A stretch of 64,000 nt of DNA from assembly GCF_902459465.1 (NCBI RefSeq), contig NC_047062.1:31124001-31188000 (forward strand), given 5' to 3'. Origin of the DNA: Asterias rubens. Taxonomy: Eukaryota. Positions 12,251-45,051 of the stretch are shown here, piece after piece; positions within the stretch are counted from its first letter, which is position 1; every line of letters starts with the position of its first letter. The notes beneath the pieces are model-generated. The model did no database searches. It was not told the DNA's origin and worked only from the letters and a program-made list of their open reading frames with translations. The translations under genes and the position numbers were made by a program.

Positions 12251-13888
12251 TTATGATTCGCGGGAAACACACCTTGGCGAGAGAGAAGGTAGATGACCGA
12301 AGTCTCGGCTACTACTGCTCTGTACACCACCACCGTCTGGCCTGCCGTATAAACTGCTCAGATCCCCGGGGGAGAGAGACGCTTGCCCTTCCGTCCTCCT
12401 CCTTCCCCGTACCTCGTGCAGATCCACATAACTGACCTTGCTGCTGTCGTTTTCAGCTTCCTTTAGCTCAGTCGGGGCCTTCTGAACATGCAACACCTCC
12501 ATGCTTCGACTGAGATGCGATAGTTTGGATAGATTACTGACCTCTTTGGCTGTTGTTGGAGGGTGGGGTACTAAGGGTTGGGTGACGGTCAGTAGGTGGA
12601 GAGTGTCTGAAGACGTAGACAGTCTGGTCGACAGGACACTGTCGAAGCTCTTGCTGAATGTGCTTGCTCGGTTCGTGACATTGGCTGACATGGGACGTCT
12701 ACTGGAGTGGTTCGAAGCGATTGGGTGATGCACGTGCTTGTATACATTATGGTTTCTCTCGTAATGCGATGGTACATCCGTGCTACCAATGGTCAGCTTG
12801 GGCTGGGAGTCAGAGAGCCGAGTTGGTTGATGAGCCTTCTGTCCACCAAAGACCAACTCTTTTTCGGGAGTTTCTGGACTTTGTGAATCCGCACGTCCAT
12901 ACTTAGGAGAACCGGTGTCCTCCGAGGATGATCTTTGACCTAGACCTTGGATTCTCTTGGACAGGCCCTCCAGGCTCATGTGATTGCATTGTTTGATGTT
13001 CTGCATACTACCGGTGTGCGTGTGGGTGCATGATGATGACGCCACACTCGTGGATTCTGAGCTTGTGGACCCGTCTGAGTCGCCAGACGGGAGAGCTACC
13101 ATCGAGGAAAACTCACTCTTCTTGTTCCTGTTTGGACTGATGGGATCCCGCTTTGGTAGCATTCTTTGGGAGTCCTGCCCCTCAGCCAAGTCGTGTAGTG
13201 AGCCTTGCGTAGCGGTGCGAGGACGTGCTTGGATCGCTTCCACGTCCGGGGTGGAGCAACCCGCCTCCCTGGCCCAATCGATAGCAGTCATGTTATGAAC
13301 GTTATCCCGTGTGTATAAGCACGCCTTGGCCTTCTGGGCTAGAAGCTGCGCGCACGCAGCATAGCCATTCCTTGCGGCAACCATTAGGGGCGTCATCCCC
13401 TCAGCGTTCATCTTATCAACGTCTAATCCAAGACGTCGAAACGACTTCGAGAGGAGCTCAATACCATCCGTGTTATCATTCATTGCGCAGTACATCAACG
13501 GCGTGTTGCCGTTCTTATCCGGCAAGTTGGGGTCAACGTTGTTCTTGACCAACTTCTTGATGACGTCGTTGCACTTGTGCTCACAGGCGTAGCTCAGCGC
13601 CGTCCTGCCGACGTTGTCGGCCAGGTTCACGTCGGCCTGGTATTTGAGGAGGAGATCCACGGCCTTGGCACGGACACCAGGCTCGTCGATTCTGACGGCC
13701 CGGATCAACGGCGTCTTGCCGTGGGTGTCGCGGGAGTTGACCACGGTGTGGCTGTCCACGGCGTCCAGAATGAACTTCGCGAGGTGGATCTTCCCCTTGA
13801 CTACGGCGTCGTGGATCGCCACACCGCCGGAGACCTGCCCGAGGCTGCTCCGGCGATAACGGTCGCGTACGGACGGCATGTGGAGCAT
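12251..13888 (-). CDS. ANKRD63: Ankyrin repeat domain-containing protein 63-like, single coding exon, 545 aa
   Basis: Long open frame; first ATG at 13888 (the track's start at 13921 is TTG). N-terminal ankyrin repeats (GKTPLIRAV, GRTALSYAC, GNTPLMYCA, GMTPLMVAA). Motifs GKIHLAKFILDA and SFRRLGL match vertebrate ANKRD63 as I recall it (GKVHLARFVLDA, SFRRLGL). Long Ser-rich disordered C-terminus. Confidence 0.88.
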   Translation of the reverse strand: MLHMPSVRDRYRRSSLGQVSGGVAIHDAVVKGKIHLAKFILDAVDSHTVVNSRDTHGKTPLIRAVRIDEPGVRAKAVDLLLKYQADVNLADNVGRTALSYACEHKCNDVIKKLVKNNVDPNLPDKNGNTPLMYCAMNDNTDGIELLSKSFRRLGLDVDKMNAEGMTPLMVAARNGYAACAQLLAQKAKACLYTRDNVHNMTAIDWAREAGCSTPDVEAIQARPRTATQGSLHDLAEGQDSQRMLPKRDPISPNRNKKSEFSSMVALPSGDSDGSTSSESTSVASSSCTHTHTGSMQNIKQCNHMSLEGLSKRIQGLGQRSSSEDTGSPKYGRADSQSPETPEKELVFGGQKAHQPTRLSDSQPKLTIGSTDVPSHYERNHNVYKHVHHPIASNHSSRRPMSANVTNRASTFSKSFDSVLSTRLSTSSDTLHLLTVTQPLVPHPPTTAKEVSNLSKLSHLSRSMEVLHVQKAPTELKEAENDSSKVSYVDLHEVRGRRRTEGQASLSPGDLSSLYGRPDGGGVQSSSSRDFGHLPSLSPRCVSRES

Positions 13889-24219: not shown

Positions 24220-27104
24220 TCAATAAAACGTGCCCGGCGTTTCCCGCCTCAGTCTCCTCCTCTCCCCGTCCATCGCAATCAGTTCATTCGTTGTCCTTTG
24301 CCTCGTCACCTCGCGTAAGTTTCTCTTGAGGCGACCACCAGCTGACTGAGCCAGTGCCCGGGCCTGGAGCCTCCGGGCTCCCTTGGCGCTGACGCACCGT
24401 GTCGCCATGAGCTGTCGTTTCCTCCGTTCGACCTGCTCTTGAAGTTCTTGCTCTACGTCTTCCATGATCTCACTCTCGGTCCTCAAGAAGAGCGAGCTCC
24501 TACGCTGCTGGAGGGCGTAATACTTAGACGTGAGTTCAGCAGGTTGTTCGAATGGAGTGAGTTCGCGGATTGGGTGTTGGGGAGGCGAAATGTCAGCAGA
24601 GTCTGCTCTCCCGGGGCTTGAGGCGCTTTCCACGGTAGGGACAGGTCGAGACGTGGACGGTGGGGAGTCCGTAAGTTCGTGGGGTTTATTGCGAGGCGAG
24701 ATTGCTGGCAATGACTTGTCATTTTTCATTTCAGAGTACCGTGGCAGTGCGTTGTGAGTCAATACATTCTCCACAGTCAGCAATCCTGCATTGATATCAA
24801 TGAGTTCTTTCTTTCTATTGTCTTTCTCAGAGCCATTCCCGAACCCCTCTGGAGATGAAGTTGTAAGTTTTTCAGTCATTTCGCGAGGGGAGGGTTTACT
24901 GTCAGCGGTGTCTTCTATCCCATTAACCGTGCTGATAGATCCACGTCTTTGGTTGTAGTAGATGAACATCCCACATTGACTTCGAACATCGTTGGGAATC
25001 TGTCCATTGCCGTTTTGTTCGTCATAATCTTGCTTGGCCTCAATATAGTTGGGAGGCGTTGGGTCAGCTTCAGTTTCATTGGGTTTACGGGGAGACAAGG
25101 GTGCAGCGCGGGGCACCTCCCGCTCCCGGGCGATTTGACCCACGCAGATGGACCCGCGTCTCCGGTCGCGAGGGGGGAACGGGGCGTGCCGAAATGTCTG
25201 CTGGGCAACATCTTCACAGCTCTTACTCGTTGCTCTGGTAGCATCTTGGCCGTGAGTGTTGAGGGGAGTTCCACTTAAGTTGGATACTTTCTTTGTTGAG
25301 CTTGACTCTTCGGATAGGTTTGCAGTGGCTCGGGTGATATGAGATGTGCCCACCGAGGCCCGACGGGACAAGAGCCGACTATGAGGGGCAGCGGCCACCT
25401 TATTCTGGAAAAAATAAAGATAAAACAACAAATAAACAAACACCGTTGAGCTTAATCCAGTCGGATTATTATAAAGCGTCCCCAAAAATGCTGCAATCAC
25501 GTTTTCTACTCAATGCAATCTTGACAAAAATTTTCATTAAAGAACCAAAACTAAAATGTTTTCGTTTGTGTAGGAACGAGTAACTTACAGGTTCCCCCCC
25601 CCCCAAAAAAAAAAAAGATATATAAGAAACAAACAACCACAACCATGTCTTCTGCAGTACCCTTTTGAAAATCAAGGACTTTGTGGTATATCACGTATTG
25701 ATACAAAGTTATATAATAATTATTTTCCATAACCGCATTGCTTTGAAGTGAAATGCATTATAAAGCCAAAAACAAAGTTTCCTCCAGAAATGTAAAGGTA
25801 TCACACACAGTTTTCAAGTCGGCAAAGGCGATGGGTAAACCTCGAAATTTAAATATAAGAAGCGTAACCGCGGTAACGCTTCTCAGATTGTTTATTCCTG
25901 TCGGATTGGTCTTCCTACCACAAGCTTTTGCTTGTCTGTTTATGCCCCCATTTCAAAATCTCCTCAAAACTGTACTTTTGATTTGTTTGCGGGAAAAGAA
26001 ATGTTTTAAAACTAAAAATGATGCAAGGGTGCTGAAAATAAAAAAGTTAAATGGACTTACTCTTTGAATGAATTGTGACAGCGTAGCAGCGGAGTCAGAT
26101 GCTCTCCGGCCCAGCCTACTGGTCAACAGTTTCACATCTCGCAGATCCTTCTTCGCCTTCTGCTTGTCTAGCAATGAGATCACAGCCGACCTCTCGTTGA
26201 ACAGCGTGGAAAGTTTCTCTCGGTTGGTGTGTAGGTGTGCTATACCGGCTGATAAGTAGGCGTGGCGTGTCGGGGACGGAGACCTGGCCGGGGAAGAGGA
26301 GCGTGGAGACACTCCAGGAGAGCGCGGTGAGACCTCGGTCGGTGAGTGGGGTGGTAGGGAGGTGGTTACCGGTACTGCTGGCATGGAGTACCGGCGGCCG
26401 AAGCGTGCCCCGGGAGGCCGGTTGATTGGCAGGCCCAACGGGCCAGCTCGGTAGGCCGTGGTGCCCGGCCGGCTCCTTCGGCTGCTTATCAGTTCATCGT
26501 CCTCATCCTCAACTTCGGGGATCTCAGCAGACTGATCAGTATCCACGGGACTGTCAGGCTGTTTATCTTTCTCTAACTCTCCAGCACCGTCCCCAGTTGA
26601 CGGGTTGTCCTCCGTTGATGGTGTGTCGTTCGTTTCATCTTCTTCCTCCAGCTCGTCAGTTTGTTGGTTTTCACTCTCAAAGTTGGTTCTGAAAGTCCGC
26701 CATTTCATGACCGCTCGTGCAGTCCTGTCATTGTAGTACAGTTTGGGGGTCGCCGCTCTTTTCATCACGTCTGCCTCTGAGGCTTTCCACTTAGCCTTAG
26801 CCGATTTGACCCTGGCATTCCCTGACGACTGTGTCGCATCTTCTTGATTCTTGTCTTCCTGAAGCTCCTCTTGTTTCACGGGTAACTCTTCCGTGGATGC
26901 TCTCTCTTGCTCGGGTGTGGCCCGTGGGGCTTTCGCGATTATCTTCCCGTTGCTGGACACCCCTGTCAGCTCCTCGATGATGGCCTGAGCCTCGGAGCTT
27001 ACGAATAGACTTTCTCTCTTCATGGTTAAATTCGGGTCCAGTTTGATTATCCGACTGACGCAAGTGCATTCGCCCTTACCGCTACATGATGCTATCTCCA
27101 TCAT
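24220..27104 (-). CDS. Uncharacterised low-complexity protein, about 742 aa, two coding exons (27104-26061, 25404-24220)
   Basis: Two long GC-rich ORFs join in phase 0: donor AGA|gtaagt at 26061/26060, acceptor ttccag|AAT at 25405/25404 (...SQFIQR|NKVAAAP...). Start is uncertain (ATG 27104 or 27023, or further upstream exons). AATAAA on the minus strand at 24191-24196. No domain recognised. Confidence 0.72.
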
Positions 27105-27421
27105 TGTTCTTGTGTGTACAGAGTACAAGTCAATTTTACACACAAAATCCACACACAAACGGCAAAGATGCCGTGAGTAAACAAACTTCTTCTAGTAGCC
27201 TTGATTAAAATGTTGATACATGTACTTGTAAGACCGTTGAGACGCTAGCTTCCGAACTGTAAGACCTCTCAGCAAGTTCTGATGTTTGTCTCACAAACAC
27301 GCTATTCTTGCATGTACAATCCTGTCCTTGCTCTATGGTACATGCCTTGCTCTGTGTCACCGATGTTGTCTGAGACCCTAACTAAAGCGAGATCGAAACA
27401 GTGGTATCACCAAAAGCTTAT

Positions 27422-39430: not shown

Positions 39431-39894
39431 TTCAGGATAATCCTAAGAGATAACCCGCAACTCCAAAGAATCAAAGAATTTTCCCTCCATGGCCACAAGG
39501 AAGGCTTGTTGCTGCTCGATTTATGCCACACTGTTGATTATTTATTTTTTTAGGCAAAATTAACAACACTTCAAATGTTACCAATTTAATCTATACTCCA
39601 GCTCAAAAGATCATCTAGAAAGGTGAGAATGCACAAGAGAGCATTTCCAACTGCCAAATAATAGGCCACAACATCATCATAAATTAATAAACCCTACAAC
39701 ATTTTTGAGGGGCCCTTGAGCAAGCCCCAGAATCCGAGATATATTTTTAACGCCAACTTGCATTCACACACTCCTTATTTTCGCTGAATGATTTTTGTCT
39801 TCCTTTCCATAACAAATTAAAACAAAAGGGAGAAAGTTACAAAACTTTCATTTGGCTTAAATTATAACCTAGCATAGATACAGAATATACTATG

Positions 39895-40106
39895 TACGTG
39901 AGGTGCCCTGTTACAGTACCCGTGGGGCACTGTTCCATTACGTGAGGTGCCCTGTTACAGTACGTGAGCTGCCCTAATACAGTACGTGTGGCGCGCCGTT
40001 ACATTACATGAGGTGCCCGTTACAGTACACATGGCGCGTTGTTACATTACGCGAGGTGCCCTGTTACAGCACGGGCGGTTCGCTGATACAGTACGCGCTG
40101 TTACAG
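39895..40106. repeat. Degenerate ~22-bp minisatellite (acgtgaggtgccctgttacagt)
   Basis: About 9 units. Confidence 0.85.
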
Positions 40107-41303
40107 TTCTTGTCTGGAATAATAAAGCTTAACCTCTCCTCTTTCATGAAATCTGCAGGTGAAGAAACATCAATTCAAAATCCTTAATTCGGACCAAATC
40201 CTGCGGAATCAAAGGCCCAATATCAACATTCAATGATGAATTCTCACAAACACAATATAATCACTCAACTCAACAATTTTAATAGAATCTATGATATGGA
40301 TACAGTAAATTTATCATCCAACTCATGCAAAACTTCAAAACAAAAGGTTCCTGTTGAGAGTCCAAGCATGGATACATTGTACAATGTAGACTGTAGACTG
40401 TAATCGTATGCTTCTGGTTTTGTGCAATCATGTTTAAAAGTGTGGACCTGAAAACAAAACAGGTCCACATAATGAAGAGTCTTGAAACACTATGTGGACT
40501 TACACACCCCCACACAGTGGGTCTTTTACCATATTGAACAGTATGAATGACCTTACATGAACAGAACAAAGGATTGTTCACAGAGTGACAGCAACACATA
40601 GCTGTGTGTTGCTGTGTATGTATCATGTTTATCAATTAATACAAATGCCTTTGTCAAAGTTGCATCTGACTTCAGGAGCCATTTTTCGGTTGATATTTCA
40701 TTTTCTTTTATGGATTAAACTCAAATCATGCACCCACACCAAGTCAGTTTTAAATTAAAAACTCATACAAATCAAACATTTGACGAAAATAAGAGCAGGA
40801 ATTCATGTCAATATCCTGTACAGTTTGTCAACTTGAACATAAATGCCACATCAGATCCATTGTCATAGAGTTGACAATCAGAGATTTCTGCTTAACGCAA
40901 AAAATTGCTTAGCAAAGTTACCAAAGTACCAGTCAACAGAAGACAGGCCACACTACACAATTGGTTAACCCGAGTCTGCTAAACAAACTTTTCTGTGCTT
41001 AGCAAGTATGAGCTACACTGCCAAATAGGGATCTTGATCTGCCCTTTACACATAATGTGAAAACATTAATAATTTCATAAGTATTGTTAATTTTTGTTCT
41101 CTCCAGATATTGATGTGATCTTGCATCCAGTTCCGATTGCTTGGTATGTTTTACGTCTTGAGGAACACTTGAGATGAACCTGGTGATTGATCTTAGATGT
41201 CTGTTGAAGGACTCTGTGCTGATGGTCAGTCAGGAGATGAACATGAATTCCGTACTGCAATCCTAGATGACATTCTCTTAAATTGTAAACTATTCTAGTG
41301 GTA

Positions 41304-43037
41304 CTAGTGGTGCCCGGCTGTTGGTAGGAAAACAAACAATAACCAATTAGATTGAGTGACAACATGATTAGAAAAACAATAGAGGGGACAACTTTTGATT
41401 TATCACATTGCCACAGGCCTGGAATTTCATCCACAAAATTCCAGGCCCGTCTTGGGCGTTGGAAAATTATACACATACAATAACATTCATTCTTTAAAAC
41501 GGTAAAACACTTGAGTGGTTTGTGTAAGAGAATATTCCCTTTAAAAAAAAAAAAATACATGTACATGTAGTTAAGTTTGAAACCATAGCAATATCAACAA
41601 CGTCAAGTAGTAAATGCATGCATCAAAGCTATGAGTTTGGTTCACACAGTAAATAACAATAATAAAATATTCAATGTAATGTAATGTAGTGTGCAACCTC
41701 TGCATACAAAGATGTTCAAAGGCATAAATCACAACGTCAATACAAAATATCAAAATACAATCATTCAGTAGAGATGAAAAATATTTGTTAACAATCCATA
41801 CAAATGCAGCATAAAAATTACATATCATGATTTTCAAAAAATATCACCATCACCCCTAAAAAAGGGGGTGAACAAGGCAATCATGATCAAATACACAATA
41901 AGGAGCATCAAAATACAGTCAAAAATACATCAGAATAATCAGTCAATAAAGCATTGAATCGTACAATGTATCACACACAAAAGATAATACACAATTGCAG
42001 CATAAAATTACATATCATGATTTTCAAAAAATAAACCCATCGCCGCTAAAGAGGGGGGTAAACAAGACAATCATCATGATCAAATATGTGTGAGCATCAA
42101 AATACAGTAAAAAATGCATCAGAATAATCACACAGTAAAGCATTGAATCATACAATCACACACAAAAGATAATACACAAATGCAGCATAATATTAAAAAA
42201 GAATAGTTTTCAAAATCAGACACCTTGGCATGTAAAAAGGGGGGAAACAAGGCAACAAAATACACAATGAAATACATAGTGAAAATAGAATACAACATTG
42301 CAATGCACACATAAATAATATTAATCAATATAGAGATGTGTATAATGCAATGACTCTTTGAACAAGCAAGTCTTTAAGTTTATCTTGAGGGACCCCAGTG
42401 AATTAGCACTGGTCTCAGATTTCAAGATTTCAACAACACTCAACACTGTTTTTACGAAGAGCCACATGTTGAAATGACATAGTATTGATTAATACAGGCA
42501 TGAAAAGAAGGGGCCTATAGCTCCTATAGATCAATAAATGCACTGTGCCTCCGACATGTGGCCCATTGTGAAAACGGTAACTTTGAAATTGGTAATCACT
42601 GTGAATTTGACATCATAATAAAAAATGTCTATTCGTGTTAACTTACATTGACCAAGTGCCTCCTTCTTCTTTAGATCTTTATCTGTGATAAGGAAAGAAA
42701 AACAAGTGGACATAAATAATTAGTTTCGTTTCATTTCATTAATATCTTTGTTCGGTGGTGCCAGTCAGAAAGTGTGGGCCAGGGATTACACCATTGGAAG
42801 CAGCAGCCAGGGGATCACCTTAAGGGGGTGCAACTTCTTAATGTTGCACATCAAGTAATAAAACACAAGGGTAACTGACTGGGTAAGTTTTGAAACCCCA
42901 AATGACTTACATCCTATCATTGTAGCTTTTGCCATTAGGTATCCTGTGATCAGCATACATGGGAAGAGGAAGGGGCCGATCTGTCTGACGTATGGCTTGT
43001 GCAACGCCATCACATTCTTGGGCCAAACGGAAGGCAT
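41304..43037 (-). CDS. ATP5MJ: ATP synthase membrane subunit j / 6.8PL (MP68)-like microprotein, 58 aa, 3 coding exons
   Basis: Exons 43037-42911, 42682-42647, 41317-41304 (127+36+14=177 nt). Two gtaagt donors and pyrimidine-rich acceptors, both junctions phase 1. Product MPSVWPKNVMALHKPYVRQIGPFLFPCMLITGYLMAKATMIGYKDLKKKEALGQSGHH*. It has the same length as human 6.8PL and shares the KN...KPY motif, one central TM segment and the terminal GHH (from recall of the human sequence). Confidence 0.82.
41800..42280. repeat. ~188-bp tandem duplication x~2.5 in the ATP5MJ-like last intron
   Basis: a.tgcagcataa recurs at about 41803, 41993 and 42179. Confidence 0.85.
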
Positions 43038-44299
43038 CTTGCTTGCTTGAACTAAGTAGCACAACAATAACAAAAATAAATTGTTTTTATTTGTTTCATA
43101 TCCAACAACACAATTATATGCCAGCAGGCTTGATATTTCACGAAGGTGGTTGCCTCCATGCCCACTGGTCGTTGCCTTGGTGCCCTTGAAATGCTTCAGT
43201 ACAATTTTACAATTTCATCATAGTGTGCCCTTTACCAAGGAGAAAAATACCTGTGTGCCCTTGCTCTTTCAATTATGAAGCAATGCCTTTGCCAGTAACA
43301 CTCCTGGGCAGGCTTGGAATTTCATCTTTAAAAGGGCAAGGCCATTTCCAATTTGCAAAAAGGGGACTTCTATCTATTGCAAAATCGTGTCATTCCAGGT
43401 CTGCCTGGGGAAAACAATTTTGAGAAATATTAATAAAGTAAAAGAAACTACAGTCTTCTTTTCATTCAATCAATCATTAAATAATAGTTTTTCTATATTT
43501 TAAATTGATTAATTAATGTTGTTTCCAAAGTCAACGGCAGTCCAAAGTAATCCTTTTCAATACATGGTAAATGTACAAAAGGAAATTACAAGTTATTACC
43601 GGTAACTACTATGAGTGCTAAACACTCAGATGCTGGCTGAACTTTGAGAAAGTAGAGATAGAAAACAGCTTGAAGAACCCAGAAAATGTTGAACTACAAT
43701 CCTACAAAAGGCTAAATTATTATATGGAAACAGATCAACTGAACTAGAACGCACGCTAACTTGTACGCCTGCCAACCCGTACGCCAACAATTGGTCAACT
43801 CATGCGCTCACCAACAAGTGGCCCATTTCATTTTCAATTTCATGCATTTGCGGATGATTTGGGAAACAACTTTTTGTTTTCAATTATTATTGAATCATCA
43901 TATCATATTCATATTCATACTACAACACGACAAGGCCAATTTTGAAGAGTATAATTTATAGTACTATGTGTATTTTATTGAGGTTATGGGGAACATTATT
44001 AAGGGCCAGACGTGACGTTACAACAAACAAGTCACTTACTTACCCCCGCCCCCACTCCCAAACGGATCCCCCAACACTCACTCCCACACCACTCACAGAC
44101 TACTGAACCAGATACTGTACACAACCCGCATATACTATAGCACTCGCAGCACACATTTTTTAATTGTTTAGTCTTTCACTTTTTTAATAGCAGCAGTCTT
44201 AATTTCATTCAGTCAAACATTCCCATCATCACACTATGAAACAAAGAACCGTAATTAATTGTAAGTTATTGTATTTTATATTATAAATGTAGTTAAAAA

Positions 44300-44400
44300 C
44301 ACATTTTACCTTACTAACTGCCGACGAAAAGTTTTAAGAATGCGGCACAAGTAAAATTTCCAAGATGGCGGTGAATGTAAATTGCGCCCTCTCCAGTTCC
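44300..44400. promoter_or_regulatory. Probable bidirectional promoter / first non-coding exons of ATP5MJ-like (-) and RDH paralogue B (+)
   Basis: YY1-type CAAGATGGCGG at 44361-44371. Minus-strand donor aag|gtaaaa at 44310/44309. Plus-strand donor-like gcg|gtgaat at 44370/44371. Both flanking genes have an acceptor just upstream of their ATG (43052 and 45050), so both need an upstream exon. Confidence 0.5.
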
Positions 44401-45051
44401 GAAAATTTCACACTTTTTTTTTGGGGGGGGGGGATGGGCAAATTTTGTGTATGGAAATAAGTATTTTCTTTAGAATTTGAATTTGTATATTATCAATTAA
44501 TGGTATATCCACAGTCAGATCTAATTTGTCATAATGTTAGGATCAATGACTGAGAAAAAGAAGGTAGGGGGAAAAATTCCAAAAATAAATTAAAACCTGA
44601 AGGTGTGAAACAGTTGGGGGCGCTTTCTCCTTAAAAAAGTAGCCGCACACGAGAACCAGTGCCTGGACGCTGCACACAAAACCAGACAATTCCGTGAGTG
44701 CTTAGCAAACATTTTACAGCCAAACCAAATTTGCATATTACTGTATTAAAGTACAGGCCATAATATGACTTTGCACTTTATACAGCAGCTAGCTAGCCAT
44801 GCCAATGTATAGCAGTTGGCAGTCAGTAGTATAGCACACTCTTCTGCTGAACCACCTCAAATCATACTCTATGCTCAAATTCAGCAGACGTCAAATTTAT
44901 CAATATTCCTGCATGATTGATTGTATTTCAGTTGCCAACGAAGTTTATTGTGAATCGCTACTGGCACTGACTTGAAGTTGTTGCATGCACAAGGCGTTTT
45001 TTTTTTTTATCTAACTGGACTGGAGTTTTTTCTCCCCTGTGAAGTGACAGG

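What the first reader, a model, noticed from the sequence alone, without database searches (positions are those of the whole stretch)
41304..43037. Hidden 58-aa ATP synthase subunit 6.8PL/j (ATP5MJ) microgene between the two RDH paralogues
Seen: three small minus-strand exons with strong splice sites (ttag|43051...42911|gtaagt; cacag|42682-42647|gtaagt; aacag|41317) splice in phase to MPSVWPKNVMALHKPYVRQIGPFLFPCMLITGYLMAKATMIGYKDLKKKEALGQSGHH*. The ORF track shows only fragments, and the last exon's coding frame (14 nt) differs from the 159-aa ORF drawn over it. Established: human 6.8PL is 58 aa with KN..W..MKPY, one TM helix and a C-terminal GHH, and is regarded as the counterpart of yeast subunit j. 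Inference: this is a divergent invertebrate orthologue of a subunit that is easily missed by annotation, and so informative about its distribution outside vertebrates.
Basis: partly seen in the sequence, partly recalled or inferred. Interest (0 to 1): 0.72.

Follow-up and report, generated by a model that had tools for sequence, protein, structure and literature searches.

The report
Unannotated starfish ATP synthase 6.8PL gene
A small, strongly expressed, spliced gene in a starfish (Asterias) genome encodes a 58-residue membrane peptide that is very probably the echinoderm version of the ATP synthase subunit 6.8PL/j (ATP5MJ), a subunit once described as restricted to vertebrates and missing from this genome's protein annotation.

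Summary
Three minus-strand coding exons (43037-42911, 42682-42647, 41317-41304, stop 41303-41301) plus a 5'UTR exon ending at 44310 splice in frame to a 58-aa peptide. All three junctions occur, with GT..AG ends, in assembled RNA contigs of four runs.

Pfam PF08039 gives no hit, and the sequence similarity to vertebrate 6.8PL is weak: BLASTP E=0.001, hhalign P=2e-4, and 17 of 20,000 segment shuffles reach the candidate's HMM score.

The stronger evidence is gene architecture. Turkey, platypus, eel and herring ATP5MJ genes share one layout: an intron at the ATG, a 121-124-nt first coding exon ending in phase 1, a 21-24-nt microexon ending in phase 1, and a short last coding piece, 14-38 nt in the three standard gene models. 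The starfish gene has 127 nt (phase 1), 36 nt (phase 1) and 14 nt. Its length is 58 aa, as in human. K7-N8-V9, K14-P15-Y16 and the C-terminal GHH sit at the same positions.

The peptide is absent from a 15-billion-protein collection that does hold this genome's other proteins.

Verdict: a real gene and a probable divergent echinoderm orthologue, so a new member of a known kind. Association with ATP synthase is inferred, not shown.

The parts
44310..44358 (-). 5' UTR exon. The 5' limit is only the furthest RNA contig end; the true start site is not mapped.
   Evidence: contigs of X2 and X3 reach 44343. The X7 contig has 49 nt beyond the 44310 junction. Joint 44310->43051 is seen in all four runs.
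43052..44309 (-). Intron 1 (1258 nt, GT..AG), lying 14 nt upstream of the ATG. It contains a high-copy repeat.
42911..43051 (-). Exon 2: 14 nt of 5'UTR, the ATG (43037-43035) and 127 coding nt (M1 to the first base of codon 43, phase 1). Encodes the N-terminal region and the transmembrane helix.
42683..42910 (-). Intron 2 (228 nt, GT..AG, phase 1).
   Evidence: joint 42911/42682 in four runs.
42647..42682 (-). Exon 3: a 36-nt microexon encoding (Y)KDLKKKEALGQ(S). It ends in phase 1.
41318..42646 (-). Intron 3 (1329 nt, GT..AG, phase 1). It holds a 190-bp tandem repeat (2.1 copies) at 41800-42195.
40300..41317 (-). Exon 4: the last 14 coding nt (41317-41304, ...S-G-H-H), stop TAG 41303-41301, then the 3' UTR. 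Continuous RNA contigs are shown down to 40300, the edge of the stretch that was laid. The UTR probably runs on to about 39.5-39.6 kb.
   Evidence: X3 contig 13, X7 contig 18 (1939 nt, 695 nt beyond 40300) and X2 contigs 9 and 10. ATTAAA at 39590 and AATAAA at 39546.
41304..43037 (-). Span of the 58-codon CDS as given in the finding (three coding pieces).

Best explanation
This is a four-exon, minus-strand, protein-coding microgene of an Asterias sea star. It makes an abundant mRNA of about 1.9-2 kb, in which the first AUG opens a 58-codon ORF. The product is a single-pass inner-mitochondrial-membrane peptide and the divergent echinoderm orthologue of vertebrate ATP synthase subunit j (6.8PL / MP68 / ATP5MJ).

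The following is inferred by homology with the bovine and human enzymes and is not shown here. The peptide has no cleavable presequence. Its basic N-terminal 20 residues (K7, H13, K14, R18) face the matrix. Residues about 20-42 form the transmembrane helix, packed next to subunits a and A6L at the monomer-monomer interface of the ATP synthase dimer. The Lys-rich tail ending in GHH protrudes into the intermembrane/crista space. K7 occupies the position next to bovine jLys-8, which coordinates a cardiolipin.

Shown here: the exons, the splicing, high RNA abundance, the ORF, its absence from protein annotation, weak sequence similarity, and the shared gene architecture.
For: - Splicing: all three junctions occur in four RNA runs, and the introns are essentially empty.
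- ORF: it begins at the first AUG of the transcript and is kept open across two phase-1 introns.
- Length and motifs: 58 aa, the same as human ATP5MJ (PDB 8h9f_P). The alignment is gapless through residue 44, with M1, K7, N8, V9, K14, P15, Y16 and again G56, H57, H58 identical to primate sequences.
- Hydropathy and charge: the hydrophobic maximum lies at 20-34 against 24-38 in human, with N-terminal net charge +3 in both.
- Similarity statistics: BLASTP E=0.001. hhalign P=5.6e-4 against a mammal profile and P=2.1e-4 over 45 columns against a vertebrate-wide profile. The HMM score is reached by 17 of 20,000 segment-shuffled and 4 of 20,000 fully shuffled decoys.
- Gene structure: turkey, platypus, moray eel and herring ATP5MJ genes each have an acceptor directly at the ATG, a 121-124-nt first coding exon ending in phase 1 (codon 41/42), a 21-24-nt microexon ending in phase 1, and a short last coding piece (14-38 nt in turkey, platypus and eel). 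The starfish gene has an acceptor 14 nt before the ATG, 127 nt ending in phase 1 (codon 43), a 36-nt microexon ending in phase 1, and 14 nt.
- Expectation from the literature: subunit i/j is inferred to be ancestral in eukaryotes (PMC10214729). A 6.8PL-position helix was seen in the brine-shrimp enzyme, but no sequence for it could be found (PMC12325954).
Against: - Pfam PF08039 gives no hit even at E<=10. phmmer against PDB chains gives none either.
- The stretch most conserved in vertebrates, YQE-h-WVG-h-G, together with W10 and Y17, is not conserved. The starfish has GPFLFPCML there, with two prolines in the helix.
- The similarity P-values (1e-3 to 2e-4) hold for one chosen comparison. They would not survive a database-wide correction on their own.
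- The first coding intron sits one codon later than in vertebrates.
- No orthologue from a second non-vertebrate could be retrieved, so selection on the ORF is untested. The only coding polymorphism seen is non-synonymous (Q19E).
- The flanking genes are SDR/RDH genes, not the TDRD9 and ASPP/PPP1R13B neighbours seen in turkey and herring.
- No protein-level or localisation evidence exists.
Confidence: 0.82

Rival explanations
1. A genuine, translated single-pass membrane microprotein that is unrelated to 6.8PL. On this reading the shared length, the KN/KPY/GHH matches and the exon pattern are coincidence or convergence among small membrane peptides.
For: There is no Pfam or PDB sequence hit. 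The vertebrate core motif YQE.WVG is absent. hhalign probability is only 30-45%. Vertebrate synteny is not shared.
Against: Several independent coincidences would be needed together. These are a gapless alignment with identities clustered at both termini; a shuffle P of about 1e-3 to 2e-4; a terminal GHH; and a CDS of under 180 nt split into three coding pieces of matching size order, with both introns in phase 1 and the first within one codon of the vertebrate position. No other Pfam family matches better.
Confidence: 0.13
2. A spliced, abundant non-coding RNA whose 58-codon ORF is a chance feature and is not translated.
For: The coding part is under 10% of a transcript of about 2 kb with a 3'UTR of about 1.7 kb. 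The gene is not annotated as coding. There are no proteomic or ribosome data.
Against: The ORF starts at the first AUG in a good context and stays open across two phase-1 junctions, one of them a 36-nt microexon. It encodes a clean hydrophobic helix flanked by basic residues. Its exon layout mirrors a known protein-coding gene.
Confidence: 0.04

Closest known systems
Vertebrate ATP synthase subunit j / 6.8PL / MP68 (ATP5MJ, formerly ATP5MPL, C14orf2; Pfam PF08039 Mit_proteolip; PDB 8h9f_P, 6zmr_j, 6tt7_P)
   Same: The length falls in the family range: 58 aa against 52-61. It has one central transmembrane helix, a basic N-terminus with K7-N8-V9 and K14-P15-Y16, a Lys-rich segment after the helix, and a C-terminal GHH. 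The gene layout also matches: a UTR intron at or near the ATG, a first coding exon of about 125 nt ending in phase 1, a microexon ending in phase 1, and a very short last coding piece.
   Different: It gives no PF08039 hit. It lacks W10, Y17 and the YQE.WVG.G core, and has two prolines and a cysteine in the helix. Intron 1 lies one codon later, and the microexon is 36 nt rather than 21-24 nt. The genomic neighbours differ. It comes from an echinoderm, whereas every family member checked in the 1.84-billion-protein search was a vertebrate.
Fungal ATP synthase subunit j/i (Atp18; PDB 6b2z_i)
   Same: It is of similar size (59 aa) and is a single-pass supernumerary Fo subunit. It is regarded as the structural counterpart of mammalian 6.8PL (PMC7999509, PMC7519299, PMC10214729).
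   Different: BLASTP finds no local alignment at all between the starfish peptide and yeast j. The starfish sequence does not visibly bridge the fungal and vertebrate forms.
The unassigned '6.8PL' helix of the brine-shrimp (Artemia franciscana) ATP synthase cryo-EM map (PMC12325954)
   Same: This is an invertebrate ATP synthase that has a subunit in the 6.8PL position, and its gene is missing from the annotation. That is the situation proposed here for the starfish.
   Different: Only a poly-alanine model exists for it and no sequence is available, so no comparison is possible.

Membership tests
ATP5MJ / 6.8PL (Pfam PF08039 Mit_proteolip) | Scores above the Pfam gathering threshold (25 bits) for PF08039 | tested here: not met
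   no family at E<=10. The human control scores 131.8 bits. With my own vertebrate-wide HMM the candidate scores only 10.7 bits.
ATP5MJ / 6.8PL (Pfam PF08039 Mit_proteolip) | Protein of about 52-61 aa with a single central transmembrane helix and basic flanks | tested here: met
   58 aa. The hydropathy maximum lies at 20-34 (human 24-38). Net charge is +3 at the N-terminus and +2 at the C-terminus.
ATP5MJ / 6.8PL (Pfam PF08039 Mit_proteolip) | N-terminal motif, W10 ... (K/R)-P-Y-Y-T at 14-18 | tested here: inconclusive
   K14-P15-Y16 are present at the same positions, and K7-N8-V9 match mammals. W10 (M in starfish), Y17 (V) and T18 (R) are not conserved.
ATP5MJ / 6.8PL (Pfam PF08039 Mit_proteolip) | Core motif Y-Q-E-h-W-V-G-h-G at 21-29, nearly invariant in vertebrates | tested here: not met
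   the starfish has G-P-F-L-F-P-C-M-L at these positions.
ATP5MJ / 6.8PL (Pfam PF08039 Mit_proteolip) | C-terminus ending in His (GHH in tetrapods, AH or SH in fishes) | tested here: met
   the peptide ends ...SGHH, identical to the last three residues in human.
ATP5MJ / 6.8PL (Pfam PF08039 Mit_proteolip) | Gene architecture: an intron at or just before the ATG, a first coding exon of about 124 nt (phase 1), a 21-24-nt microexon (phase 1), and a short terminal coding piece | tested here: met
   (turkey L001, platypus L003, eel L004, herring L002). The starfish has 127 nt in phase 1, 36 nt in phase 1, then 14 nt. Intron 1 is displaced by one codon.
ATP5MJ / 6.8PL (Pfam PF08039 Mit_proteolip) | Statistically supported profile similarity | tested here: inconclusive
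   hhalign gives P=2.1e-4 with probability 45%. The shuffle P is 2e-4 to 9e-4. This is significant for one planned comparison but not database-wide.
ATP5MJ / 6.8PL (Pfam PF08039 Mit_proteolip) | Physically a phospholipid-dependent supernumerary subunit of mitochondrial F-ATP synthase, located at the dimer interface | not testable with these tools
   This needs purification with mass spectrometry, or cryo-EM, of the starfish enzyme.
Fungal subunit j (Atp18) | Detectable sequence similarity to Atp18 | tested here: not met
   no BLASTP alignment at E<=100; no hit to any Pfam family.

The most novel reading that the evidence does not exclude
This would be the first sequence-level identification of subunit 6.8PL/j outside vertebrates. 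The vertebrate gene, with its peculiar three-piece coding structure, would then date back at least to the deuterostome ancestor. Its apparent restriction to vertebrates would reflect small size, fast sequence divergence and microexon splicing rather than true absence. The starfish sequence and the phase-1/phase-1 exon template would then give a practical way to find the 'missing' j subunits of other invertebrates, such as the unassigned helix in the brine-shrimp enzyme.
Probability: 0.55. Interest if true: 0.65.

Novelty: new member of a known kind. Interest (0 to 1): 0.55.

Why it matters
Subunit 6.8PL was stated to be restricted to vertebrates (PMC4505582, 2015). Later comparative work inferred that subunit i/j is ancestral in eukaryotes, and noted that small subunits are often missed by gene prediction (PMC10214729). 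In 2025 a brine-shrimp ATP synthase structure had to model its 6.8PL helix as poly-alanine because no gene could be found (PMC12325954).

A confirmed echinoderm orthologue would close part of that gap. It would show which residues of the subunit are dispensable (the vertebrate YQE.WVG core) and which persist (K7, KPY, the Lys-rich tail, terminal GHH). It also illustrates how a highly expressed OXPHOS gene can escape a modern annotation pipeline. The interest is moderate: the result is expected in principle and has not been shown biochemically.

Tried and rejected
- Pfam scan of the peptide: nothing at E<=10.
- phmmer of the peptide against PDB: nothing. A profile that includes it finds only the mammalian chains.
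- Word-indexed search of 5.8 billion protein clusters with the peptide: no candidate. Exact look-up of both alleles: absent.
- ESM Atlas look-alikes of exon 1: only low-scoring bacterial hypothetical proteins, uninformative.
- Exhaustive hmmsearch of a mammalian 6.8PL profile over 1.84 billion representatives: 157 hits. All sequences inspected carry the vertebrate core motif, and the nine of ten sampled that carry a source name are vertebrates. No bridging invertebrate sequence was found. phmmer of the candidate against these 208 sequences gives at best 10.9 bits.
- Scan of JGI metagenome contigs for relatives: 202 pattern matches, none confirmed.
- Comparison with yeast subunit j, to see whether the starfish peptide bridges the fungal and vertebrate forms: no alignment. 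That idea is dropped.
- A second ORF in the transcript: a 115-aa Cys/His-rich ORF in the 3'UTR. It lies far downstream of the first AUG and I judged it a chance ORF; it was not pursued.
- Synteny: the vertebrate neighbours TDRD9 and ASPP/PPP1R13B were not recognised in what I scanned of the window, namely the SDR flanks, an ankyrin-repeat ORF and two large ORFs with no Pfam hit. Synteny therefore gives no support.
- Fetching the Asterias amurensis orthologous locus was not possible with the exact-protein look-up. The nearest single-exon anchor is about 26 kb away, against a 10-kb flank limit. No between-species dN/dS was obtained.
- Structure prediction was not run, because a single helix would not discriminate between the readings.

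Full report
**1. What is in the sequence**

On the minus strand the window reads ...gctacttag|TTCAAGCAAGCAAG ATG... (acceptor at 43051, ATG 43037-43035). There are 127 coding bases up to 42911|gtaagt. A 36-nt exon follows at 42682-42647, between cacag| and |gtaagt. A last exon starts after aacag| at 41317 and carries 14 coding bases and TAG (41303-41301). A candidate 5'UTR exon ends at 44310|gtaaaa.

The mechanical ORF list shows only fragments. The 159-aa ORF over the last exon is in another frame.

**2. Is it transcribed and spliced that way?**

Yes. I laid Logan contigs of four RNA runs on 40300-44800. Two runs carry the organism's own label (X1, X7). Two are marine metatranscriptomes with declared RNA-seq or RT-PCR libraries (X2, X3).

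- Every run has a single contig that carries all three joints: 44310->43051, 42911->42682 and 42647->41317. Each joint removes a GT..AG intron.
- Intron depth is 0 in X2, X3 and X7. In X1 it is 5-15 against about 1600 for the spliced contig, the pattern expected for a mature mRNA with a trace of precursor.
- The contigs run on colinearly from 41317 to the edge of the laid stretch at 40300. The X7 contig (1939 nt) has a further 695 nt, so the 3'UTR is about 1.7 kb. ATTAAA and AATAAA signals lie at 39590 and 39546. The 3' end itself was not mapped.
- The 58-codon ORF begins at the first AUG of the reconstructed mRNA, with A at -3.
- One coding difference between runs was seen: 42983 G>C, which changes Q19 to E. 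About twelve differences were seen in roughly 1 kb of 3'UTR. This is too little to measure selection.

**3. Which organism, and is the gene annotated?**

A single-exon ankyrin-repeat ORF of the window (12254-13888, minus strand) is in the protein collection under NCBI and UniRef. It shares a 90%-identity cluster with an Asterias amurensis protein. The window is therefore from an Asterias sea star, probably A. rubens, and its official proteome is in the collection.

The 58-aa peptide is not in the collection. No cluster among 5.8 billion shares three 5-residue words with it. Neither allele is present as an exact sequence among 15 billion. 'Hidden microgene' is a fair description.

The flanks are two short-chain dehydrogenase (RDH-like) genes arranged head to head. 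One is on the minus strand with its first coding exon near 36.7-37.0 kb. The other is on the plus strand from about 47.1 kb.

**4. Is it 6.8PL? Sequence evidence**

Human ATP5MJ (PDB 8h9f_P) is 58 aa and reads MLQSIIKNIWIPMKPYY...APAPGHH. The starfish peptide is also 58 aa. It aligns to vertebrate sequences without a gap through residue 44 and again at the C-terminus. M1, K7, N8, V9, K14, P15, Y16 and G56-H57-H58 are identical to primate sequences, and the transmembrane segment falls in the same place.

The statistics are modest:
- BLASTP gives 19.2 bits, E=0.001 for the single comparison.
- hhalign gives P=5.6e-4 against a mammalian profile. Against a 16-sequence vertebrate-wide profile it gives P=2.1e-4 over 45 columns, probability 45%.
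- With an HMM of the vertebrate alignment the candidate scores 10.7 bits. That score is reached by 17 of 20,000 decoys shuffled within the N-terminal, transmembrane and C-terminal segments, and by 4 of 20,000 full shuffles.

Pfam PF08039 gives no hit at E<=10, while human scores 131.8 bits. The block best conserved in vertebrates, YQE-h-WVG-h-G, together with W10 and Y17, is not conserved in the starfish. Sequence alone makes the relationship plausible but does not prove it.

**5. Is it 6.8PL? Gene-structure evidence**

This evidence is independent of the residues. I fetched the genomic loci of four vertebrate family members and solved their exon models exactly.

| Species (locus) | First coding exon | Microexon | Last coding piece |
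|---|---|---|---|
| Turkey (L001) | cag\|ATG, 124 nt, phase 1, codon 42 | 21 nt, phase 1 | 20 nt |
| Platypus (L003) | cag\|ATG, 124 nt, phase 1, codon 42 | 24 nt, phase 1 | 38 nt |
| Moray eel (L004) | cag\|ATG, 124 nt, phase 1, codon 42 | 21 nt, phase 1 | 14 nt |
| Herring (L002) | cag\|ATG, 121 nt, phase 1, codon 41 | 24 nt, phase 1 | 236 nt (an atypical 126-aa gene model) |
| Starfish (window) | acceptor 14 nt before the ATG, 127 nt, phase 1, codon 43 | 36 nt, phase 1 | 14 nt |

A coding sequence of under 180 nt that is cut into three pieces is unusual in itself. Here there is also a UTR intron hugging the ATG, both coding introns are in phase 1, the first lies within one codon of the vertebrate site, and the second lies just before the His-ended C-terminus. 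This match does not depend on residue similarity. Together with section 4 it makes common ancestry much the most economical reading. I put it at about 0.8.

**6. How far the known family reaches**

A mammalian 6.8PL profile was searched exhaustively against 1.84 billion representative proteins. It found 157 sequences at E<=0.001. All that I read carry the vertebrate core motif. Of ten sampled, the nine that carry a source name are a gecko, a caecilian, two turtles, a newt, a turkey, a crow, an eel and a herring. None is close to the starfish peptide; the best phmmer score is 10.9 bits. PDB holds only mammalian chains.

The literature agrees:
- '6.8PL is restricted to vertebrates' (PMC4505582).
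- Subunit i/j is inferred to be ancestral in eukaryotes, and small subunits often go unpredicted (PMC10214729).

An invertebrate orthologue is thus expected in principle. I found none at the sequence level in the sources I could search.

**7. Likely mechanism (inferred by homology, not tested)**

In the bovine dimer the transmembrane helices of the two j subunits lie at the monomer-monomer interface, beside subunits a and A6L. jLys-8, together with A6L Lys-27 and Lys-30, coordinates cardiolipin CDL1. [quoted passage not shown]

The starfish peptive keeps a lysine at position 7 (as in human), a basic N-terminal region, a 20-odd-residue hydrophobic helix and a Lys-rich tail ending in GHH. I therefore expect the same topology and position. 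The replaced core motif and the two helix prolines suggest different packing contacts.

**8. Rivals**

- An unrelated microprotein with coincidental features (0.13).
- A non-coding RNA with a chance ORF (0.04).

Both are disfavoured by the gene-architecture match and by the ORF being maintained across two phase-1 junctions.

**9. What I could not do**

- No second non-vertebrate orthologue could be obtained, so conservation and dN/dS are untested.
- Synteny gives no support: the vertebrate neighbours are TDRD9 and an ASPP-like gene, while the starfish neighbours are SDR genes.
- There is no protein-level evidence.

**10. Verdict**

This is a new member of a known kind and an annotation gap of moderate interest (0.55).

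Noticed in passing
window 42716-43470 (intron 1 and the 5' part of intron 2 of the microgene): RNA contig word depth is enormous here, up to about 30,000 in X1 and 6,800 in X7. There are dozens of different contigs, many loose ends and clustered variant positions (43196-43217). This looks like a high-copy interspersed repeat (SINE-like) that is transcribed from many loci. It is not part of this mRNA.
   Followed up: no
window 44361-44370, minus strand: The motif CGCCATCTTG (a YY1-type GCCATnTT core) lies immediately upstream of the furthest 5' RNA contig end (44358). Such elements are typical of housekeeping and mitochondrial-protein gene promoters. The transcription start was not mapped.
   Followed up: no
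window 42983: G>C on the plus strand in three of the four RNA runs changes codon 19 from CAG (Gln) to GAG (Glu). This appears to be a common allele of the peptide.
   Followed up: partly
window 41800-42195 and 39894-40095: A 190-bp tandem repeat (2.1 copies, 84% matches) lies inside intron 3. A 22-bp tandem repeat (9.2 copies) lies in the presumed 3'UTR.
   Followed up: no
window 40279-40635, minus strand: A 115-118-aa Cys/His-rich ORF sits inside the 3'UTR of the microgene transcript. It lies far downstream of the first AUG and I judged it a chance ORF. It was not searched.
   Followed up: no
window 33.9-37.0 kb (minus) and 47.1-49.8 kb (plus): The two flanking RDH-like short-chain dehydrogenase genes are arranged head to head, and the microgene lies inside their shared intergenic space. 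The microgene start (about 44.36 kb) and the first coding exon of the plus-strand RDH (about 47.1 kb) are less than 3 kb apart and divergent.
   Followed up: partly
window 24220-27158, minus strand: Two very long ORFs (426 and 401 aa), Ser/Pro/Glu-rich, have no Pfam match. They are probably large exons of a disordered protein. I did not identify them.
   Followed up: partly
L001 (turkey) and L002 (herring): The vertebrate ATP5MJ gene lies next to a DEAD/helicase/Tudor gene (TDRD9-like) in turkey and next to an ASPP2-like RA/Ank/SH3 gene in herring. The herring gene model P0202 (126 aa) uses an alternative long last exon in place of the short ...KPAH end.
   Followed up: partly
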